This document shows, in pieces, positions 3,521-24,214 of a stretch of DNA of 64,000 bases; the first letter of the stretch is position 1; every line of letters starts with the position of its first letter. Below the pieces are notes generated by a model. It saw only the letters and a list, made by a program, of their open reading frames with translations. It searched no databases and was not told the origin of the DNA. The translations under genes and the position numbers were made by a program. Source of the stretch: Macrostomum hystrix (lineage: Eukaryota > Animalia > Platyhelminthes); the NCBI GenBank assembly GCA_950097015.1, contig CATNEN010000011.1:3782001-3846000 (forward strand), given 5' to 3'.

Positions 3521-4336
3521 ATGTCCTCTGTGACAACAACGGTCCTGCTGACAGCAGCGTTGCTGCTCCTGACTGCAGGAAGCCTCAGCAATGCTGATCA
3601 GCTGCTCCTGACTGCAGGAAGCCTCAGCAATGCTGATCAGCAACAAAGAAATCGGCTGACTGGCTTCACTTTGAAATTCGCTCGACTGTGCCTGCAGCCG
3701 GATTTCATTGTTGCCCAGCACAATCGCATAAAGAACGAGTTGATGTGCGCGTTCGCCTGTCTCAAACTCAGCTCCAGCTGCCAGGGATTCCAGTGGGAAA
3801 ACGATAGCAATTGCCGATTGTTCGTGTTCGACAGGTGCAGCCACAAGGTCCGGACCGACTGCAGTCAGTTCGCGTGGGTCTTTGTTCGCAATCAGGCGGG
3901 CCTGCCGGACGGTCAGCTGTGTCCCAATGGCTTCGGCAGCTCCTTCTTCGGATCCATCTACAGGATGCTGGCCGTCACGAGCTGGACTGCCGGTCTGACC
4001 AAGTGCAATGCGCTGCCCGGACTCACCAAGTACTCGGACGCCAACGACCGCAATGAGACGCAGCACTTTCACTGGATCAAGACCAATGTGAACTCCGGGA
4101 ATGGCTATTACATTGGTGGCTGGAGACCAGGCAGTTTGTTTAATGACACCTGGTACTGGCGTGACTGCAATGCCAGCTTCCTGCCGGAGGTGTGGTTGCC
4201 GGGCCAGCCGAACGGGGGCAGCCCCACCAATCGGGCAAACATCTGGTCCAGCCACACCGGAGGGGTTGACGACGAGCACGAATCGGGGCGCGGCATCGAC
4301 TTCGCTTTGTGCGAATGCATCGATCCATTCGTTTGA
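3521..4336 (+). CDS. Secreted PAN/apple-domain plus C-type lectin-like protein, intronless, 271 aa
   Basis: Signal peptide; PAN-like C..C......CQGFQW....C; CTLD-like segment with YYIGGW, WYW and WLPGQPN; terminal Cys. Confidence 0.75.
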   Translation: MSSVTTTVLLTAALLLLTAGSLSNADQLLLTAGSLSNADQQQRNRLTGFTLKFARLCLQPDFIVAQHNRIKNELMCAFACLKLSSSCQGFQWENDSNCRLFVFDRCSHKVRTDCSQFAWVFVRNQAGLPDGQLCPNGFGSSFFGSIYRMLAVTSWTAGLTKCNALPGLTKYSDANDRNETQHFHWIKTNVNSGNGYYIGGWRPGSLFNDTWYWRDCNASFLPEVWLPGQPNGGSPTNRANIWSSHTGGVDDEHESGRGIDFALCECIDPFV

Positions 4337-5194
4337 GCAGTCCGTGAAGTGCAAAGAACTATAACAAAATGACAATTTGCTCGTACGAGTAAATAGACTG
4401 GCTTAGAACTATATTCCTTTGAATTTTTATAATCTATAATTATAATGTTTTGATTACCGCTTCCCTAATAGGACTGGATGTGCAGCTGACACAACAGCCG
4501 TAGCTATATCGCGATTTCTAGTAGGCTACAACCCCTTCTAGGGTTCTAGGCTAATTGATAAGATTCGAACTGCAAGGTTATTGCGTGGGAATTACATCTT
4601 TCGAAAGTTAAACTACGAGTATTAGCTATACCATAGCCTAGGCTAGCTTTTATGAGCCGTGCAAGTGATACCAAATAAGGAAATCAGTTTTTGCTATTTC
4701 GTATTATTCTGGCCTGCTTACGTTATAGCTTCTATGAATAAATAGTATGAAGCGCGTTATATGAAATTTAAACTACTCGTAAGTTACTTTAATTCTTGTC
4801 TTTTGAGTCTTTTAATTGGAACCCTTTATGCCAATAAGTTCAGGGTTAGCAATAGTAATTTTCTGAACTGGCAACTTTGTAGCCAAGTCTTTATTTATAG
4901 CTGTCTAACTTTTAATTGGCATAAAATATTCACGCCATGTACTAACTAGCTAGAAGTCTACAACATATTTCTGTATTCTGCAAGAAACTTCCCACGGTGA
5001 GGTATAATTTTTCATCACTTTACAGGCAAATATTTAATAGACAGTTGCAGTGAGGCAAAACTTCTTTGGACACAACAATGTCTTCAATTTATCCCTTTAT
5101 CCCTTGCTATACTTTTGTACACATACACGAATTTAGTGTATTCAGATTTAGATTCATTTCAAAGAATTTAGTATATTTACGATTATACCTGACA

Positions 5195-5690
5195 CAGGGT
5201 GGCGAATACAGGAATTCTATTTGGAGGGGCGAATTGTCAGAGGGCGCCGATGGGGCACCAATGGGGGCGCCAACCACCCACCAGGGGTACCAACCACTCC
5301 ATTAGGGGCGCCAACCACCCATCAGGGGCGCCAACCACCCAACAGGGGCACCAACCACTCCATTAGGGGCGCCAACCACCCATCAGGGGCGCCAACCACC
5401 CAACAGGGGCACCAACCACCCAACATGGGTGCCTACCACCCCATTAGGAGGGACAACCACTCCATTAAGGGCGCCAATGACCCCATTAGGGGCGCGAACG
5501 ATCCCATTAGGGGCGCCAATCACCCCATGAGGGGCGCGAACGATCCCATTAGGGGCGCCAATTACCCCATTAGGGGCGCGAACGATCCCATTAGGGGCGC
5601 CAATCACCACGTAAGGGGCGCTATAAATCCACGACGAAAATTATAGGGGGGATGGCGGTCGTCCCCAGCCCCCCTAAATCCGCCCCCAGT
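5195..5690. mobile_element. hAT-like MITE containing about 20-21 bp GC-rich tandem repeats; same family as 12353-12625 in the opposite orientation
   Basis: Ends cagggtggcgaatacaggaatt and cccccctaaatccgccccc match the two ends of the 12353 element; internal aggggcgccaa(c/t)... repeats. Confidence 0.6.
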
Positions 5691-15498: not shown

Positions 15499-16064
15499 AT
15501 CAATCATTTCGGTCGTATTGCTTTTTTAATGACAAATAACGTAGTTATAATTATTTTCACAATGCTACTAGTTCAAGGCATCCTACAAGAAGCAACTAAT
15601 TCAAAACACTAAATAAACTGCCAGATTACATTTAAAAGCAATTAGGAACTAAAAATATAACTTTTCAAAATTCAACACTATTTAAATCTATTTTTTATTC
15701 ATGCTTTTGCAATTTGAAGAAAAATTAGTAAGATTTTTAGGAAGCGAGCGAGACAGGCAATAGTTTGGAATTGCGAGTACCTGAAATTTAAAATCTAGAA
15801 AGGCAACTCCCGACAAACCACTTACTTTCCCGACCATTATAGGCTGACTGGCTGTCCCTATGCTTACACAGGGTGGGTACTCGGAGTTAGACAAATCAGA
15901 TGTACTTCTTTTGCAACTTGGAAAATATATAGTTAACTTCCGTTTCGTTTAAACGATTCTTAAAAATACTTTCTGTCAAATTTAATGTGTTTGCCTTACT
16001 TTAGCCAGTGTTTTAAGGGAGATCTGGTTAAAGGAAGGATGTAACTACAGTGTCCTACAGACTA

Positions 16065-16180
16065 TTCAATAGGATGTGACCAGTGTCCGACTAAACATTC
16101 AATGGGATGTGACCAGTGTCCTACTAAACATTCAATAGGATGTGACCAGTGTCCCACTAAACATTCAATGGGATGTGATA
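16065..16180. repeat. 33-bp tandem repeat (about 3.5 copies)
   Basis: ttcaataggatgtgaccagtgtcc.actaaaca. Confidence 0.8.
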
Positions 16181-16357
16181 AAAAACGAAAGAAAGATAAG
16201 ATGAACAAAGATTTTTCCTAGCAAATCACTACTTGAGCTGAATCTTCGTTTACTTAGCATGCAATTAAAATATTACAAATTTGTATATTTCTTGAAGGCT
16301 AGAAGCCGAACTTATTTTCGCAAATGCAGATTAAGGAACAAAGTTAGCGTGGCTAAA

Positions 16358-18903
16358 TTAAACTGGCACATTGACATATTTGCCATAGGCCTTGTTGTTA
16401 ATCTTCTGCAAAATATAGCCTAACTGTTGGCCGGGTCCGACTTCGTAAATGTGCGGATGCGGCGTCTCCGGACTGCGCCTAGTCAGGCTGGTGACAATCT
16501 GGTGCCATTTGACCGGACTGTGCACCTGCTTCACCAATAGCTTGGCTATGGTGTCCACCGTGCGAGGCGGTTTCACAATCACATTCGAATATACTGGAAT
16601 GCGTGGAACTCGCAATGTGCAACGGTTTAGAGCTCTGGCTAGTGTTTTAGAGGCCGGATACATTAGGCTGGTGTGAAATGCGCCGCTAACTTGCAAAGGT
16701 TTCACTGACGCAATGCCGTACTCAGAGTAATGCTGCTCAATGTACTGTAGAGCCTGGTGGATTGGTTGAGGAATAAATTCAAAACCATAGTGCAAGTGAG
16801 TAACAATGATTGGCGAGTCAAATGAAGCATTGTTATCTAGATGTGGTGAGACCCATCATGGTTTAAAGAATAAGATTAACGTTAGGTTTAGATTTATTTT
16901 GATTTGCTTACTTAGCCCATGATCATAGGATTAGGATTATACTACCGATTTCCTAGAATAGGTAAGATTTTCTAACATCCTATGCACTTTATGGAATCTT
17001 TTAGGTTTCCAAGAAGGTTTTGGACTTTGCATTAGCGTTTCGGATTTCCTAAAATCCTTCGGATTTCCTAAAATCCTTCGGATTTCCTAGAATCCATCGG
17101 ATTTCCTAGAATCCATCGGATTTCCTAGAATCCATCGGATTTCCTAGAATCCTTCGGATTTCCTAGAATCCTTCGGATTTCCTAGAATCCTTCGGATTTC
17201 CTAGAATCCTTCGGATTTCCTAGAATCCTTCGTATTTCCTAGAATCCTTCGGATTTCCTAGAATCCTTCGGATTTCCTAGAATCCATCGTATTACCTAGA
17301 ATCCTTCCTTCGGATTTCTTAGAATCCTTTAGATTTCCTAAAATCCTTCGGACTTCCTAGAACCCTTCGGATTTCCTAGACTTCTTCGGATTTCTTAGAA
17401 TCCTTCGGACTTCTTAGAATCCTTCGGACTTCCTAGAATCCTTCGGATTTCCTAGAATCATTCGGATTTCCTAGATCTAAAAAGATTCTTAGTTTCTATA
17501 ACTACGCACTGATTCTAGATATTGCTTCAGAAGCTCCAAAACTATATCTTACCTCTTTATGCCCGGCCACAACCACACACCTGGCAAACAGGTGGCTGGC
17601 AATCTCGCACACTGGTCGCACCATGCCACGCTGAGATCTGCAATGATCTTTGGCGGCTTTCATTGCTAAGCCAATGTTTGAGTCGCCGGTTAGAAAACAG
17701 GAGGCCATGCCGCCGGACACCTGATCGCTGGCTAGCTGCATGGCCTGCGCGCGGACCTGGACTAGGCGGAGACCTGTTCAGGTGAGAGATTTTTTATTTA
17801 GTTGCTATGCGGTGTTGTTGATAAACGACGTTGATAAACAAAGAGAGAAGAATGAAAACTCTGAAGAGGATAAAGTTAAGGAGCTCGTCGGGAAGCTCGT
17901 AGCTCAGTGGTTAGAGCTACGGACTTCTGATGGAGAGGTCGGGAGTTCGAATCACTTTTATTTCTTGGGAGTTTTTAGGGAATATGGTTCAATGAAATTA
18001 AATCATTTGTTTTAAGATTGTTAAACTTTGTTAAAAGTTTGTTTTAAGGAAAATGGGTTTTAGGGAATATGGATTTAGAGAATATAGTTTTAGGGAATAG
18101 GGGTTTTGTAGATAATAGGGTTTTAGGGAATACGGTTTTAGGGAATATAGTTTTAGGAAATAGGGTTTTAAAGAATATGGTTTTGGGGAATACGGTTTTA
18201 GGGAATAGGGTTTTAGGAAATAAAATTTTAGGGAATAGTGTGGCAGGAAACAGTTATAGTAAACTATGATCAGTAATTGGAGTTAAAAGGGCAGTTTTGC
18301 AGAGAATACAGTTGTAGGGAATGAGTGAGACGAGAGCGCCAGTTTCTCACCCTCTTCAAAAGTGAAAGTGCCAGCGAAAGCGTGAGCTGCAAACTCGCCG
18401 ACGCTGTAGCCGGCGGCACCGATGCACTTGGGCAGGGCGTTCGGATGTAAAGCCTCGAGGGCGAGTAGGGCGGCCATGGAGGTCACGTAGATGGCCGGTT
18501 GGCTGAACTGTGTGAGACCGAGCTTTCGCTCGGGGCCAGTTAGGCATAGTTTCAATAAATCGTATTTTAATATATCGTTGGCGTGCTCAAACACTTGCTT
18601 AGTGCCCGGATAATTGAGCAGTTTGGAGCCCATGCCAACAAACTGGCTAGACTGACCTGGGAACAGAATGTAAGTGGTGTCCTCTGGTGCGACACCCTCT
18701 GGCCCGCGATAAACAAATCGAGTGTGCGATTCAAAGGGTTCAATTTGATCTTCGACTGATTTTGACTTTTCTGAATCGGCTTCGTTGCTACTACTTTTAG
18801 AAGCGCTGTCGGTTGCTAGGCAACGGAAATGATTTGAGCATGGGTTAGCGTAATAACGCCTGTAGAGGGCGCTCAGGATGCAGCGACTGAAGGATGACGT
18901 CAT
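16358..18903 (-). CDS. MCAT: Mitochondrial malonyl-CoA:ACP transacylase, 389 aa; exons 18903-18351, 17773-17553, 16753-16358
   Basis: Mitochondrial-type leader; LFPGQSSQFVGMG; TQFSQPAIY; GYSVGEF catalytic Ser motif; VSGAFHTSLM; YEVGPG. Confidence 0.93.
17039..17475. repeat. 19-bp minisatellite in MCAT intron 2
   Basis: cggatttcctagaatcctt units. Confidence 0.9.
17895..17952 (+). mobile_element. tRNA-like SINE head fragment in MCAT intron 1
   Basis: gtagctcagtggttagagc...gggagttcgaatc (A and B boxes); no acceptor stem closure or CCA. Confidence 0.55.
18050..18240. repeat. 15-bp minisatellite in MCAT intron 1
   Basis: gggttttagggaata units. Confidence 0.85.
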
Positions 18904-18994
18904 GTTCTAAAAATAGCACTGGAATTAAATACGCGTGCAGTCATGGAATGGTTGTCAGGGTGCTTTTTTTAAATGTATTAACAATAATAACTGC

Positions 18995-19146
18995 GTACAG
19001 TTGTTCAGTCCATGGACTGGGGGTGCCACACTCAACCTAAATTACCCCAGCTAGTGTCTTACTAAACGATACAAATTATTACAGTAGAGTCGGGAATCGA
19101 ATTTCCGACCGACCATTGTGAGTCCAACGCTCTAACCACTAAGCTA
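18995..19146 (-). mobile_element. tRNA-derived SINE family B (internally deleted)
   Basis: Head tagcttagtggttagagcg...ttcgattcccgactc and tail cagtccatggactgaaca shared with the 36005 and 39675 copies. Confidence 0.7.
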
Positions 19147-19430
19147 AAAACACAGGATGGTCTTGATACAATAATTAAACTCGCTCGCTCGCTCACGAAA
19201 ACATAGCTCGACTATATCTTGGCCTAGATAAAAACAAGCAAAACAAAGAAAATTTTATTCAGCGTAAAGACAGATAAAATAAGATTATATTAAAATATAA
19301 TTTACCAATGAAACGAATTGACCTGATGCCTTCGAATAAGCTAGCATGTAGAGCAAAAGTACCAAACTTGGACTAATTGATTCTAAGAATGCATTACATC
19401 TGCCAATTTTTAAACAATTAACAACAAATC

Positions 19431-19748
19431 TCATTCCTTCCAAACGTGAGCACACTTTGCGCAACGATACTTAGTAGTCATAGGCTCATCGGCTGATCTG
19501 GTCTGCATCTGTACAAAATAGCACTGCATGTGCGAACACTCGGGACAGCGCTCCTCTGTAGTAGCCGCATTCTTCCAAGCATCTTCCCCGCCAAGAATGT
19601 CGTCAATCTCTTTCAATCTGGGATATTTAGTCTGCTCCATTGGGCACAGGACATTGTACACGTAGGGGCAGGATTCGCAAGCGTATCGATAGCAACGATC
19701 GCCTAGCTCCAACCGGAGCAGATTTGAGCAAGTTGGACAGAAGAGCAG
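19431..19748 (-). CDS. POLR3K: RNA polymerase III subunit RPC10/C11; coding region starts directly at a splice acceptor with no in-frame ATG
   Basis: cccgcag|LLFCPTCSNLL...CESCPY...CPECSH...QMQTRSADEPMTTKYRCAKCAHVWKE*; only the initiator Met of the MLLFCP consensus is missing. Confidence 0.92.
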   Translation of the reverse strand: MLFCPTCSNLLRLELGDRCYRYACESCPYVYNVLCPMEQTKYPRLKEIDDILGGEDAWKNAATTEERCPECSHMQCYFVQMQTRSADEPMTTKYRCAKCAHVWKE

Positions 19749-19904
19749 CTGCGGGTGATTGACAATGTGAACTGGGAGTATATTTGCTTTAGACTGAAGC
19801 TTCCTTTGTGTGCCTTCTAAATATTAACTGCACTGCCTAAACTTAAAACCATTATTAGGATAATAGGCCTTTACTACATGCTAACCCCTTATGACCCTTC
19901 ACCC

Positions 19905-21435
19905 TTAACCCTTCAAATTTTCCTACAACCCTCCATGTTCATTCAATCGACTTTTGCTACACCCCTCCAAGATCATTCAATGAGCTTATCCTACAACCCT
20001 CAATGATCATTCAATGAGCTTTTGCTACACCCCTCCAAGATCATTCAATGAGCTTATCCTACAACCCTCCATGATCATTCAATGAGCTTATCCTACAACC
20101 CTCAATGATCATTCAATGAGCTTATCCTACAACCCTCAATGATCATTCAATGAGCTTTTGCTACACCCCTCCAAGATCATTCAATGAGCTTATCCTACAA
20201 CCCTCCATGATCATTCAATGAGCTTTTGCTACAATCCTCCATGATCATTCAATGAGCTTTTGCTACAACCCTCCATGATCATTCAATGAGCTTTTGCTAA
20301 AACCCTCCATGATCATTCAATGAGCTTTTGCTACAACCCTCCATGATCATTCAATGAGCTTTTGCTAAAACCCTCCATGATCATTCAATGAGCTTTTGCT
20401 ACAACCCTCCATGATCATTCAATGAGCTTTTGCTAAAACCCTCCATGATCATTCAATGAGCTTTTGCTACAACCCTCCATGATCATTCAATGAGCCTTTG
20501 CTAAAACCCTCCATGATCATTCAATGAGCTTTTGCTACAACCCTCCATGATCATTCAATTTGAGCTTTTGCTACAACCCTCCATGATCATTCAATGAGCT
20601 TTTGCTACAATCCTCCATGATCATTCAATGAGCTTTTGCTAAAACCCTCCATGATCATTCAATGAGCTTTTGCTACAACCCTCCATGATCATTCAATGAG
20701 CTTTTGCTAAAACCCTCCATGATCATTCAATGAGCTTTTGCTACAACCCTCCATGATCATTCAATGAGCCTTTGCTAAAACCCTCCATGATCATTCAATG
20801 AGCTTTTGCTACAATCCTCCATGATCATTCAATGAGCTTTTCCTACAACCCTCCATGATCATTCAATAAGCTTTTGCTACAATCCTCCATGATCATTCAA
20901 TGAGCTTTTGCTACAATCCTCCATGATCATTCAATGAGCTTTTCCTACAACCCTCCATGATCATTCAATAAGCTTTTGCTACAATCCTCCATGATCATTC
21001 AATGAGCTTTTGCTACAACCCTCCATGATCATTCAATGAGCTTTTGCTACAATCCTCCATGATCATTCAATGAGTTTTTGCTACAATCCTCCATGATCAT
21101 TCAATGAGCTTTTGCTACAATCCTCCATGATCATTCAATGAGCTTATCCTACAACCCTCCATGATCATTCAATGAGCTTTTGCTACAACCCTCCATGATC
21201 ATTCAATGAGCTTTTGCTACAACCCTCCATGATCATTCAATGAGCTTTTGCTACAATCCTCCATGATCATTCAATGAGCTTTTGCTACAATCCTCCATGA
21301 TCATTCAATGAGCTTTTCCTACAACCCTCCATGATCATTCAATAAGCTTTTGCTACAATCCTCCATGATCATTCAATGAGCTTTTGCTACAACCCTCCAT
21401 GATCATTCTATCAACTTTTACTTCAACCCTCCATA
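19905..21435. repeat. About 1.5-kb array of a 34-bp unit between MED30 and POLR3K
   Basis: atgatcattcaatgagcttttgctacaaccctcc, roughly 40+ copies. Confidence 0.95.
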
Positions 21436-21812
21436 ATTTAGAAAACAGATAAACACGCACTGTTTAACTTAATAAAAACTAAATAAAATACAAGGTTCTG
21501 GAAATATGGTTTTAATACGCAACTGAAAGATAGTGAATAAATGTTTATTTTTACAAAAATGTATAACTTTTTGTGTATACCAAAACGTGCTAACTGTACA
21601 TATTAAGTAGTACAGACTACTACAAGTAGAACAAGCAGTGAGTTGATTTCTTAGAACTTGATTTATGAAAAATGTAGGACTATTTTGGCTATGAAAATGC
21701 AGTATTAGCTAGAAAATTTTATGACCAATATTTTTTTGCCTAGAGACACTATTAATTGTTTAGCAAACAATTACATAAATGACTTCTAAATTGTTCATTA
21801 AGTAGGCTCTGT

Positions 21813-22298
21813 TTAACTAGGATTAGGTAATTCGCTTAGCATTACCGACAGCTGATGAATTAATTGAGCATTTCCCGATGCCAATCGTTTAATAGTGCCA
21901 TTCAATTGATTAACGCGTTCAATCAATCGTTTAGCTTCCTCTGCTCTAGCCGTGGACTCAAGCGAAGCGCTAGCCTTGACTGTCTTCTTATTCGCTAAGC
22001 CATTGTTGTCGCCTTCATCGCCTTCTAACGGCAGCAGTTGTACGGGATCGGGTTGATTCAAATGACGACTAGCCGAGACCACGCTAGTGTAGACAGCTCT
22101 TAGCCTGCTTAGCTTCTCGTCTAGAGCTACAACTAGTTCAGTGGGCGGCACCTGCTGCTGCTGCTGCTGTACAGAACCTGCCCCGAGGCCACCCTGAGCC
22201 GGCCGATAATAAGCACAAATATCCGACACCGATTGAAGAACATCGAAAACTAGATCGCTACCCAGCTGACAAAGGCGAGCTGATTCAGTTAGGGACAT
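21813..22298 (-). CDS. MED30: Mediator subunit 30, intronless, 161 aa
   Basis: SARLCQLGSDLVFDV resembles TASLCRIGQETVQDI; LSRLRAVY resembles FRKLRLVY; DPVQLLP resembles VEQLIPY; C-terminal coiled coil (comparison from memory). Confidence 0.75.
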   Translation of the reverse strand: MSLTESARLCQLGSDLVFDVLQSVSDICAYYRPAQGGLGAGSVQQQQQQVPPTELVVALDEKLSRLRAVYTSVVSASRHLNQPDPVQLLPLEGDEGDNNGLANKKTVKASASLESTARAEEAKRLIERVNQLNGTIKRLASGNAQLIHQLSVMLSELPNPS

Positions 22299-22734
22299 GT
22301 TTGATAAGTTTTGCTTTGGTCAGTAGTATCTGAAACTATAATGTGGGCAAGGCAAAACTTATTTTGTACATTTTATCAACCAAGGTCTACTGTAAGTAGT
22401 ATAGAACAACCTAGTGAAGGTTGTAGTGTTTCTACTCTTGAATGGCATTAACTACATCAAAACGGGCGCTCTATGAAGACAGGAATATCAGCTGCTTACA
22501 CTAGACATTTCCTTCGAAGTCTTAGAAAGCCGCTAGTAGTTATTTGAAAAAAAACTATATGAAAAGCGTCAATGTGTACACAGACAAATGTTAATATATT
22601 TTTTCAATCTACATTTTTAATAATTTTAGCTAACAGACAATAATGATGCTAGATGTTGTAGGATGTACAATAATTTAATTGTTTGAAACTGTTTTCAACC
22701 GAATTGGCAGTAAATGACACAATGATCTGTTTAT

Positions 22735-23685
22735 TCATTGCATATTGGTCTTCGGCTTTGGTTTGCCAGGATTGATATCAATTGGTCCTAACAGGTCAGC
22801 GTGGTAACCGGTTCGTCTGGCTAATTTCAAGCGCTGCTCAATTTTCTGAGCCGGGTCCCAGCCAACTGACCGCAGTTTCAATTGGTGCAGACACTCCTGA
22901 AATTCGGCCTCCTTTTTCTTTTCGCGCAGATGTCGCTTGTCGCGCAGCATGGCGGCGCAGCGTTTGCGAAACTTCTTCAGCTGATGCCGCTTCATTCTGC
23001 GGCGTCGATTGACAATGTCAAGATGGCCGCGCGGCCAGATAATGCCTCGCGATGGGATGAAGATTGGCGATTGGCGAGTCTTTGTTGCAGCTGTGACAGA
23101 CGAACTGATTAGAGAATTCGGCCAACATATTGTGGTCAGGCTACGATTTGGTAACTGCAGACCATTTGGCTGGTGCTTTAAGAGGCCTAAAATATGATAA
23201 GTTGCATTTTAAGTTAACTACAAACATGCATAATAAAAGTGAACACTGCCTGACGATGAGAAAGCCAGGGCAAATGTACACATCTGTGCGAGGGACTACA
23301 AACCTCTATGATCATTCAAAAAACACTAGTTTCAAGAAATTCAAGTCACCATGATTCTTTAATAAAATTTATTACACTTTTCTCCAAAAAAACGTTGGAC
23401 TAAACACTGCACGAGTATATAGTAGTTCTACTTCTTTAAATGCATTGAAAAGAACTGTAAGGACTGCTTACCATTGTAAGAAGCAGAAAAATGACAACTC
23501 GACATTGATTTAGATGAAAACTGGCGCCTAATTTGAGAATTAATTGGAGTCTGCATCGACTGCTGATGGATCGATGCCAGATTTGATGTGTTAAGAACTA
23601 TCTGCCTATCAAATGAAGCCAGTGAAGTTGACCGTGTCAATGACATCCCAGCTAAGCGACTAGTCAGGCATGCTATGGACCACAT
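22735..23685 (-). CDS. AURKAIP1: Mitoribosomal protein mS38 / AURKAIP1-like, 221 aa; exons 23685-23472 and 23186-22735
   Basis: Ser/Arg-rich mitochondrial leader; phase-1 intron gtaagc...tttag; basic RRRRMKRHQLKKFRKR...KKKEAEF motif (DUF1713-like). Confidence 0.7.
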
Positions 23686-23989
23686 TTTTTGGCTGCACTG
23701 TCAAAATAAACCAGTTTGTGGCTGAAAATTAAAGTTTTTGCAGTTATTTCTAGACCCCATGACGATTTACATATTTGCCATTTAATAACTTTACTATTTA
23801 GAAGCTAGGACACAAAATACAGGTTTATCATGGGACAAATGCATTATTTTTGAATACCTTATGAATTCCTGTGATTTGCTAATGAATCCAGATCTCTCTG
23901 GCTTAAAGAAAGCACAGAACTTCTCATAGTACAAACTCAGATGAAATAAGCTATCAACTGTATTTTATATGCATACAATACTACCCATA

Positions 23990-24214
23990 CATGCGCAACC
24001 TCCCAAATCTTAGCCAGCTGTGCGACTTAGTTTTTGCTCTATTTACGACTTAGTTTGCTCTCATTTGCTCTCTTTTTCTCTCCCCTTTTTCCTTTTCTTC
24101 ACGCCTTCCTTTTTTGTCCCTTGGTCCCCCCTTAGATTTTTTTGCACTTGGTTGATTGGTTTTTGCGACTTACCTTGCTTGGCCCTCGTTTCACCCGGCT
24201 GGGTGTTGCGCATG
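23990..24214. mobile_element. Second copy of the CATGCGCAAC MITE, inverted relative to 243-506
   Basis: TA|catgcgcaacc...gttgcgcatg|TA. Confidence 0.75.

What the first reader, a model, noticed from the sequence alone, without database searches (positions are those of the whole stretch)
19740..19860. POLR3K has no genomic start codon; the spliced leader may donate the initiator AUG
Seen: the conserved N-terminus (M)LLFCP begins exactly after cccgcag| in phase 0, and the ORF track finds no ATG upstream in frame. The only nearby ATG|GT is a weak ATG|gtttta at 19852-19844. Established: the flatworm SL ends in AUG, which can act as the initiator Met. Inference: an essential Pol III subunit depends on trans-splicing to be translated. 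This is the best-supported unusual host mechanism in the window.
Basis: partly seen in the sequence, partly recalled or inferred. Interest (0 to 1): 0.85.

Follow-up and report, generated by a model that had tools for sequence, protein, structure and literature searches.

The report
Spliced leader supplies POLR3K start codon
In this Macrostomum-type flatworm the gene for the small RNA polymerase III subunit RPC10/POLR3K has no start codon of its own, and assembled transcripts show the trans-spliced leader, which ends in AUG, joined exactly in front of codon 2. This mechanism is already known in flatworms, and here it is confirmed for one more gene.

Summary
On the minus strand an intronless RPC10/POLR3K reading frame (19748-19431) starts at residue 2 of the conserved protein, directly after a CAG acceptor. 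There is no in-frame ATG upstream.

Transcript contigs from two runs of one study, identical to the window, end at the acceptor and continue with 22 letters. With the shared G, these are the last 23 nt of the published Macrostomum spliced leader (…TTGCATG). A third run's contig has 23 unaligned letters at the same end, not printed. The mature mRNA therefore reads AUG|CUG CUC UUC UGU. No contig covers the proposed cis exon at 19852.

Use of that AUG for initiation is inferred:
- The 34 codons before the first internal Met are under purifying selection (dN/dS about 0.13).
- They encode the N-terminal zinc ribbon, the essential part of yeast C11.

M. lignano has two copies in the same Med30-RPC10-MCAT arrangement. 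One also lacks an ATG (TAG|TTG). The other has a genomic ATG exactly where the acceptor sits.

The mechanism has been established in flatworms since Cheng et al. 2006. This scan noted it at least 31 times elsewhere in this genome, and one follow-up on other genes reached the same reading. It is a new example of a known kind and of modest interest.

The parts
19749..19755 (-). Trans-splice acceptor cccgcAG (AG = 19750-19749). The spliced leader is joined to base 19748.
   Evidence: Sequence. Contigs of runs X5 and X6 align up to 19749 and then continue with SL letters; the X4 contig ends at the same place. It partly fits the published M. lignano trans-acceptor motif [T/C]TNCAG.
19434..19748 (-). 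RPC10/POLR3K codons 2-106 (LLFCPTCSNLL...AHVWKE), a single exon. The N-terminal Rpb9-type zinc ribbon uses C4, C7, C24 and C27. The C-terminal TFIIS-type ribbon carries RSADEP.
   Evidence: Covered without mismatch by RNA contigs of three runs.
19431..19433 (-). Stop codon TGA
19258..19430 (-). 3' UTR as far as the contigs reach: they end at 19258 in two runs and at 19317 in one. An AATAAA lies at 19259-19254.
   Evidence: table 8 and the sequence. Contigs cannot define the true 3' end.
19848..19852 (-). Rejected.
   Evidence: It is the only ATG|GT upstream as far as 23000. GTTTTA does not fit the cis-donor motif GT[G/A]AG. Contig depth is 0 at 19762-19915 in all runs.
19918..21434 (.). 34-bp satellite, 44.6 copies, filling most of the space between Med30 and RPC10 (likely outron or intercistronic region).
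21813..22298 (-). Upstream neighbour on the same strand: Med30 (161 aa, with its own ATG).
   Evidence: The same order Med30 -> RPC10 -> acyltransferase occurs in M. lignano locus L001; L002 has Med30 -> RPC10, with no acyltransferase gene called.
18349..18920 (-). Downstream neighbour: first exon of a malonyl-CoA:ACP acyltransferase-type gene (Acyl_transf_1). Acceptor ttccAG at 18920-18919, its own ATG at 18903, and a cis donor GTGAGA after 18349.
   Evidence: RNA contigs cover 18349-18919 and carry 23-24 further unaligned letters beyond 18919. They jump from 18349 to 17771.

Best explanation
The RPC10/POLR3K gene of this Macrostomum-type flatworm is an intronless exon that begins at codon 2. 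Its pre-mRNA is SL trans-spliced at the CAG acceptor (19750-19749), either from a promoter of its own or, more likely, as part of a Med30-RPC10-acyltransferase transcription unit. The roughly 35-nt leader ends in AUG. The splice places that AUG in phase 0 directly before CUG CUC UUC UGU CCA, so the mature mRNA encodes MLLFCP..., the canonical RPC10 N-terminus.

Shown: the missing genomic ATG, the SL-exon junction in RNA, and the lack of RNA over the proposed cis exon.

Inferred: ribosomes initiate at the SL AUG, so a full-length, functional RPC10 from this copy can only be made from trans-spliced mRNA.
For: 1. No genomic start. Residue 1 of the ORF piece equals residue 2 of human and yeast RPC10, and there is no in-frame ATG before the upstream stop.

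2. RNA junction.
- The 514-nt contigs of runs X5 and X6 cover 19258-19749 with 0 mismatches, then carry 22 loose letters. In mRNA sense these read GCGAAGACTCAATTTATTGCAT, followed by the G at 19749.
- The X4 contig (456 nt) covers 19317-19749 and has 23 extra letters.
- This equals the last 23 nt of the published M. lignano SL. That sequence is absent from the 64-kb window even at 3 mismatches, so it is not a nearby cis exon.

3. The runs are RNA. The neighbouring gene's contig is cis-spliced from 18349 to 17771 across a GTGAGA donor.

4. Codons 1-34, which lie before the first internal Met, are under purifying selection against the M. lignano copies. dN is 0.10 and dS is 0.75-0.87, so dN/dS is about 0.12-0.13. 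All four N-ribbon cysteines are invariant. The N-terminal domain plus linker carries the essential function of yeast C11 (PMC8501072).

5. M. lignano copy L001 has the same architecture. Its acceptor is ttTAG|TTG CAC TTT TGT, and the acceptor TAG is itself an in-frame stop. The NCBI record for that protein is 'partial' and is named g4 of a transcription unit.

6. Precedent. The flatworm SL AUG serves as initiator Met in vivo, and dozens of schistosome and Echinococcus mRNAs need it (Cheng 2006, as reported in PMC9851317, PMC3510090, PMC7653826 and PMC12582326).
Against: - No translation data exist for this species (no ribosome profiling and no N-terminal peptides).
- The RNA evidence consists of assembled contigs from three runs of a single study whose library type is not on record. 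Contigs show presence only. They do not show the share of trans-spliced molecules or the absence of rare isoforms.
- The AUG context is weak by vertebrate rules (U at -3, C at +4).
- The acceptor matches the published trans-acceptor motif only in part.
- Other RPC10 copies with their own ATG may exist elsewhere in this genome, as in M. lignano, so dependence at the level of the organism is not shown.
Confidence: 0.86

Rival explanations
1. A tiny upstream cis exon ending in ATG (donor ATG|GTTTTA at 19852-19848, roughly 100-nt intron) supplies the start codon. The SL-bearing form would be a minor or alternative isoform.
For: It would be in phase and give the same protein. It is the only ATG|GT on this strand up to 23000.
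Against: - Contig depth is 0 at 19762-19915 in all three runs.
- The contig ends printed for two runs carry the SL beyond the acceptor rather than this exon, and the third run's extra letters were not shown.
- GTTTTA does not fit the M. lignano donor motif GT[G/A]AG.
- The M. lignano copies share no homologous sequence upstream of the acceptor.
Confidence: 0.03
2. The SL AUG is skipped and translation starts at the first internal AUG (Met35 of the piece). This would give an RPC10 without the N-terminal zinc ribbon.
For: The SL AUG context is weak, and 5'-proximal AUGs can be leaky.
Against: - Codons 1-34 are conserved, with dN/dS about 0.13 and four invariant Cys.
- The N-terminal domain plus linker is the essential part of C11.
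- A scanning ribosome that skips the SL AUG first meets an out-of-frame AUG (gtacaATGtcc, read directly) that opens a short dead-end ORF.
Confidence: 0.04
3. Non-AUG initiation occurs at the CUG that is codon 2, on trans-spliced or unspliced RNA, so the SL AUG is not needed.
For: From my own knowledge, CUG is the most efficient near-cognate start codon. The M. lignano copy L001 has UUG there.
Against: - In the mature mRNA an in-frame AUG lies immediately 5' of the CUG and would be met first.
- CTG and TTG are simply Leu codons matching the conserved Leu2 of RPC10.
- No unspliced RNA was seen upstream of the acceptor.
Confidence: 0.03
4. The copy is a non-functional, start-less pseudogene or retrocopy, and the working gene lies elsewhere.
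For: It is intronless and has no ATG. Macrostomum genomes hold many duplicates.
Against: - The ORF is intact, expressed and trans-spliced.
- It is under purifying selection.
- It sits in synteny conserved with M. lignano, Med30 -> RPC10 -> acyltransferase in L001.
- It has no poly(A) tract or target-site features of a retrocopy.
Confidence: 0.02

Closest known systems
Flatworm SL 3'-terminal AUG used as initiator methionine (Cheng, Cohen, Ndegwa & Davis 2006, J Biol Chem 281:733; Schistosoma, later Echinococcus and Hymenolepis)
   Same: - The SL ends in AUG.
- It is spliced in phase 0 to an ORF that lacks its own start.
- The conserved N-terminus is restored only with the SL Met.

In S. mansoni the SL AUG is in frame in 28% of trans-spliced mRNAs and more than 40 cDNAs need it. 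Its use is conserved among Neodermata.
   Different: [quoted passage not shown]
- The gene differs. I found no paper linking RPC10/POLR3K to SL trans-splicing.
- Translation from the SL AUG was not tested here.
M. lignano SL trans-splicing and operons (Ustyantsev & Berezikov 2021, PMC8629364)
   Same: - The SL tail is identical.
- The acceptor is of CAG type.
- The neighbours lie on the same strand, and repeat-filled intergenic spacers are under 1 kb after removing repeats. That is the paper's own criterion for an operon.
   Different: That paper does not analyse SL-donated start codons. The window is not the Mlig_3_7 sequence: it differs from the two M. lignano copies at dS of about 0.75-2.2.
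slORFs in nematodes, Oikopleura and trypanosomes (slORFfinder, PMC9851317)
   Same: The leader contributes the start codon of a reading frame in the recipient mRNA.
   Different: Those cases mostly rely on near-cognate NUG codons inside the SL and create new or alternative ORFs. Here a true AUG restores the canonical ORF of a conserved housekeeping protein.

Membership tests
SL-donated initiator AUG (flatworm type) | The organism's spliced leader ends in AUG | tested here: met
   The loose ends of the RNA contigs read ...TTGCAT followed by G. This is identical to the 3' end of the published M. lignano SL, which ends in ATG and is followed by GTAAG in the SL RNA gene.
SL-donated initiator AUG (flatworm type) | The mature mRNA carries the SL joined at an AG acceptor at the start of the ORF | tested here: met
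   Contigs of X5 and X6 show the SL tail joined at 19749/19748 with 0 mismatches. The X4 contig ends there with 23 unshown letters. The SL sequence is absent from the window.
SL-donated initiator AUG (flatworm type) | The SL AUG is in frame with the main ORF, with no stop in between | tested here: met
   The junction reads AUG|CUG CUC UUC UGU, which translates to M-LLFC....
SL-donated initiator AUG (flatworm type) | No genomic in-frame AUG can give the conserved N-terminus | tested here: met
   The upstream frame has a stop and no ATG. Residue 1 equals residue 2 of the orthologues. The first internal Met is residue 35.
SL-donated initiator AUG (flatworm type) | Translation actually initiates at the SL AUG | not testable with these tools
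   There is only indirect support: dN/dS of about 0.13 for codons 1-34 and the essential role of the N-terminal domain in yeast C11.
RPC10 / C11 / POLR3K | N-terminal Rpb9-type zinc ribbon with four Cys | tested here: met
   PF02150, E 1.1e-05, above the curated cut-off. C4, C7, C24 and C27 are invariant.
RPC10 / C11 / POLR3K | C-terminal TFIIS-type zinc ribbon with the acidic hairpin (RSADEP) | tested here: met
   PF01096, E 7.4e-18. QTRSADEPMT is invariant.
RPC10 / C11 / POLR3K | Closer to the Pol III subunit than to the Rpb9, RPA12 or TFIIS paralogues | tested here: met
   Human RPC10 scores E 4.8e-41 and yeast C11 2.4e-26. RPA12 scores 4.4e-10 and Rpb9 about 3e-08.
SL-resolved operon (Med30-RPC10-acyltransferase) | Same-strand neighbours with short, repeat-adjusted spacers (under 1 kb by the published criterion) | tested here: met
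   The Med30 stop (21813) lies 2064 nt from the acceptor (19749), of which 1517 nt are satellite. The RPC10 3' region (about 19258) lies about 340 nt from the next acceptor (18919).
SL-resolved operon (Med30-RPC10-acyltransferase) | Downstream genes are SL trans-spliced | tested here: inconclusive
   For RPC10 the answer is yes. The acyltransferase contigs carry 23-24 unaligned letters past the ttccAG acceptor at 18919, but those letters were not printed.
SL-resolved operon (Med30-RPC10-acyltransferase) | A polycistronic precursor from one promoter | not tested
The M. lignano gene name '...Mlig009527g4' hints at a multi-gene transcription unit.

The most novel reading that the evidence does not exclude
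In Macrostomum the RPC10 start codon switches between leader-donated and genome-encoded among closely related copies (M. lignano L001 versus L002, dS about 0.1). The genomic ATG of L002 would have arisen by copying the 3' end of the spliced leader from a trans-spliced cDNA over the acceptor.

The grounds are as follows. All five differences between L002 and L001 in the 14 nt before codon 2 change L002 towards the SL sequence. L002 matches the SL at 9 of 14 positions, against 4 of 14 for L001 and for the window. If true, this would be a route by which SL-dependent genes regain autonomy.
Probability: 0.1. Interest if true: 0.55.

Novelty: new member of a known kind. Interest (0 to 1): 0.27.

Why it matters
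- Annotation. Start-less but perfectly functional genes are missed or marked 'partial', as NCBI did for the M. lignano protein. Gene finders for flatworms should allow an SL-donated ATG at phase-0 acceptors.
- Biology. For this copy, production of a core Pol III subunit is tied to SL trans-splicing. Ustyantsev & Berezikov found SL trans-splicing enriched among conserved and stem-cell genes in M. lignano.
- Evolution. The pair of M. lignano copies, one with an AG acceptor and one with an ATG at the same three bases, is a small natural experiment. It shows how such dependence is gained or lost.

None of this changes the known picture of flatworm trans-splicing.

Tried and rejected
- Rfam scan of the whole window: no family at gathering score, so no SL RNA gene here.
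- ARAGORN on 16000-24000: no tRNA, although the repeat at about 19085-19145 looks tRNA-derived.
- Search for the SL tail in the window at up to 3 mismatches: none.
- Cheng et al. 2006 itself is not held. I cite it only through papers that describe it.
- Supplements of the parasitic-flatworm SL paper, the Hymenolepis genome paper and the S. mansoni SL landscape paper were searched for RPC10, RPC11, POLR3K and 'polymerase III'. Only other Pol III subunits appear (RPC8, RPC3), so I could not learn whether the orthologue is SL-dependent in Neodermata.
- Exact-sequence look-ups of the window's Med30, the 86-aa ORF and the RPC10 piece, and of the 106-aa M. lignano product: none is in the collections. 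I could therefore neither name the species nor assign M. lignano transcripts to L001 or L002.
- The homologue search returned only one Macrostomum protein and no identifiable planarian, fluke or tapeworm orthologue.
- The cis-exon, internal-Met, CUG-start and pseudogene readings were considered and rejected (see rivals).

Full report
**What is in the sequence.** The feature lies on the minus strand. The sequence reads ...aatcacccgcAG|CTG CTC TTC TGT CCA ACT TGC..., with the AG at 19750-19749 and the first exon base at 19748. From there a single uninterrupted frame runs to TGA at 19433-19431.

In-frame translation upstream of the AG gives 26 sense codons and then a stop, with no ATG among them. 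The 105-residue piece matches Pfam Zn_ribbon_RPB9 and Zn_ribbon_TFIIS. It aligns end to end with solved RPC10 chains, residue 1 of the piece to residue 2 of human RPC10 (E 4.8e-41) and of yeast C11 (E 2.4e-26). Matches to the paralogues are far weaker: RPA12 at 4.4e-10 and Rpb9 at about 3e-08.

In a multiple alignment every orthologue has Met in column 1 and the window's frame starts in column 2. All eight zinc-binding cysteines and the RSADEP hairpin are invariant. That includes the lone ATG|GT at 19852-19848, which is the only one on this strand up to position 23000.

**RNA evidence.** Three small runs of one study (X4-X6) hold contigs identical to the window.

- In X5 and X6 a 514-nt contig covers 19258-19749 and then carries 22 letters that lie on nothing in the window.
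- In X4 a 456-nt contig covers 19317-19749 and has 23 extra letters, which were not printed.
- Read in mRNA sense, the loose letters are GCGAAGACTCAATTTATTGCAT. The next base is the G at 19749, shared by the acceptor AG and the leader's final G. Then comes CTGCTCTTCTGT.

The published M. lignano spliced leader is a 35-mer ending ...GCGAAGACTCAATTTATTGCATG, and GTAAG follows it in the SL RNA gene (PMC8629364). The contig tail is exactly its last 23 nt. That sequence does not occur in the 64-kb window even with three mismatches, so it is not a nearby cis exon.

The library type of the runs is not on record, but they are RNA. The neighbouring gene's contig leaves the window sequence at 18349, just before a GTGAGA donor. 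It resumes at 17771, a 577-nt intron.

Contig depth is zero across 19762-19915 in all runs, so the proposed cis exon at 19852 is not represented. Its GTTTTA also does not fit the species' donor motif GT[G/A]AG. The mature mRNA therefore reads AUG|CUG CUC UUC UGU CCA, which translates to MLLFCP.

**Is the leader's AUG the start?** This step is inferred. Three things support it.

1. The first internal Met is residue 35. The 34 codons before it, compared with the two M. lignano copies, show dN 0.10 against dS 0.75-0.87, a ratio of about 0.12-0.13. The region is translated and constrained.
2. It encodes the N-terminal zinc ribbon. In yeast the N-terminal domain plus linker provides the essential function of C11, whereas the cleavage domain is dispensable (PMC8501072).
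3. A ribosome that skipped the SL AUG would first meet an out-of-frame AUG (gtacaATGtcc) opening a short dead-end frame (read).

The precedent is strong. Cheng et al. 2006 showed that the flatworm SL AUG acts as initiator. In S. mansoni it is in frame in 28% of trans-spliced mRNAs and more than 40 cDNAs need it (as reported in PMC9851317). In Echinococcus, 10 of 15 orthologues of SL-AUG-dependent schistosome genes keep that dependence (PMC3510090). All flatworm SLs end in AUG (PMC12582326; PMC7653826). [quoted passage not shown]

**Relatives.** The only Macrostomum hit in the protein search is a 96-aa M. lignano protein annotated 'hypothetical protein BOX15_Mlig009527g4, partial' (93% identity). 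It is encoded at two places in assembly GCA_002269645.1. The order there is Med30, RPC10 and, in L001, an Acyl_transf_1 gene; no acyltransferase gene was called in L002. The window has the same order: Med30 at 21813-22298 and the acyltransferase exon at 18349-18903.

- Copy L001 reads ...ctcattttAG|TTG CAC TTT TGT CC. It has no ATG, and the acceptor's TAG is itself an in-frame stop.
- Copy L002 reads ...ttcattcATG TTG CAC TTT TGT CC. A genomic ATG occupies exactly the three bases where L001 has TAG.
- The two copies encode identical proteins and differ at dS of about 0.1.
- Both differ from the window at dS 0.75-2.2. The window is therefore a different Macrostomum lineage or an old paralogue.
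- Homology among the three loci begins precisely at the acceptor/ATG position.

With the window as outgroup, the start-less state is the more parsimonious ancestor and L002's ATG is derived.

A marine environmental relative is 64% identical over 103 residues. It has its own ATG 5 nt after a ttttcag.

I could not find planarian, fluke or tapeworm orthologues with these tools.

**Context.** By the published criterion (same strand, repeat-adjusted spacing under 1 kb), Med30-RPC10-acyltransferase qualifies as an operon.

- The Med30 to RPC10 gap is 2064 nt, of which 1517 nt are a 34-bp satellite.
- About 340 nt lie between the RPC10 3' region and the next acceptor at 18919.
- The acyltransferase contigs carry 23-24 unaligned letters past that acceptor, probably also the SL, but the tool did not print them.

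A polycistronic precursor was not tested.

**Comparison and verdict.** This works exactly like the SL-donated initiator Met described for parasitic flatworms. It passes every membership feature that sequence and RNA contigs can test. Only initiation itself remains untested.

It is a new example (gene and lineage) of a known mechanism. The scan has flagged the same pattern at least 31 times elsewhere in this genome. One follow-up on other genes reached the same reading (s1-316733).

The claim that the animal 'depends' on trans-splicing for Pol III should be limited to this gene copy. The one mildly new point is the L001/L002 pair, which shows that SL dependence of a start codon can flip between closely related copies.

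The limits of the evidence are these: contigs rather than raw reads, one study, no quantification of isoforms, no translation data, and a species that could not be named.

Noticed in passing
L001:3960-3980 and L002:3520-3540 (M. lignano, GCA_002269645.1): Two M. lignano RPC10 copies encode identical proteins (dS about 0.1) but differ at the start. L001 has the acceptor ttTAG before TTG. L002 has tcATG at the same bases. All five differences in the 14 nt before codon 2 move L002 towards the SL 3' end. L002 matches the SL at 9 of 14 positions, against 4 of 14 for L001 and for the window. This is a post hoc observation on a small sample.
   Followed up: partly
L001:3092-3955 and 4481-5510; L002:2987-3522 and 4025-4540: In M. 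lignano the RPC10 gene is bracketed by inverted arrays of one 24-bp satellite, with unit ACCCTCTGGAATCGCCCCTCAAAC upstream and its reverse complement downstream. In a common precursor RNA these arrays could pair and loop out the gene.
   Followed up: no
window 19918-21434: A 34-bp satellite of 44.6 copies (93% matches) fills the Med30-RPC10 spacer. The same slot in M. lignano holds an unrelated 24-bp satellite.
   Followed up: partly
window 18903-18920 (-): The acyltransferase gene has an acceptor ttccAG|TGCTATTTTTAGAACATG, and RNA contigs continue 23-24 letters past it. If those letters are the SL, its AUG would open a 4-codon uORF (AUG UGC UAU UUU UAG) ending 3 nt before the gene's own ATG.
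   Followed up: partly
window 18978-19145: A dispersed repeat lies between RPC10 and the acyltransferase gene. Summed RNA-contig depth reaches about 3400, and many contigs join it to unrelated sequence. Its part at about 19085-19145 (-) looks tRNA-derived (tagtggttagagcg...ttcgattcccgac), but ARAGORN calls no tRNA. It is probably a SINE.
   Followed up: partly
P0001 (NCBI, M. lignano): The public M. lignano RPC10 protein is annotated 'hypothetical, partial' and starts 10 residues inside the exon. This is likely an annotation casualty of the missing genomic ATG.
   Followed up: partly
L003:131-465 (Logan ERR14224704; also a TARA metagenome scaffold, L004): An AT-rich marine environmental contig encodes the closest non-Macrostomum RPC10 (64% identity). 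It has its own ATG 5 nt after a ttttcag. The gene caller reported only the C-terminal 61 aa from an internal Met.
   Followed up: partly
window 17039-17475 and 18041-18238: Two further tandem arrays were found: a 19-bp unit with 22.8 copies and a 15-bp unit with 12.9 copies. The second lies in the first intron of the acyltransferase gene.
   Followed up: no
window 22735-22995 (-): An 86-aa basic ORF (MKRHQLKKFRKR...) lies on the same strand upstream of Med30. It has no Pfam match and may be a further member of the same gene cluster.
   Followed up: no
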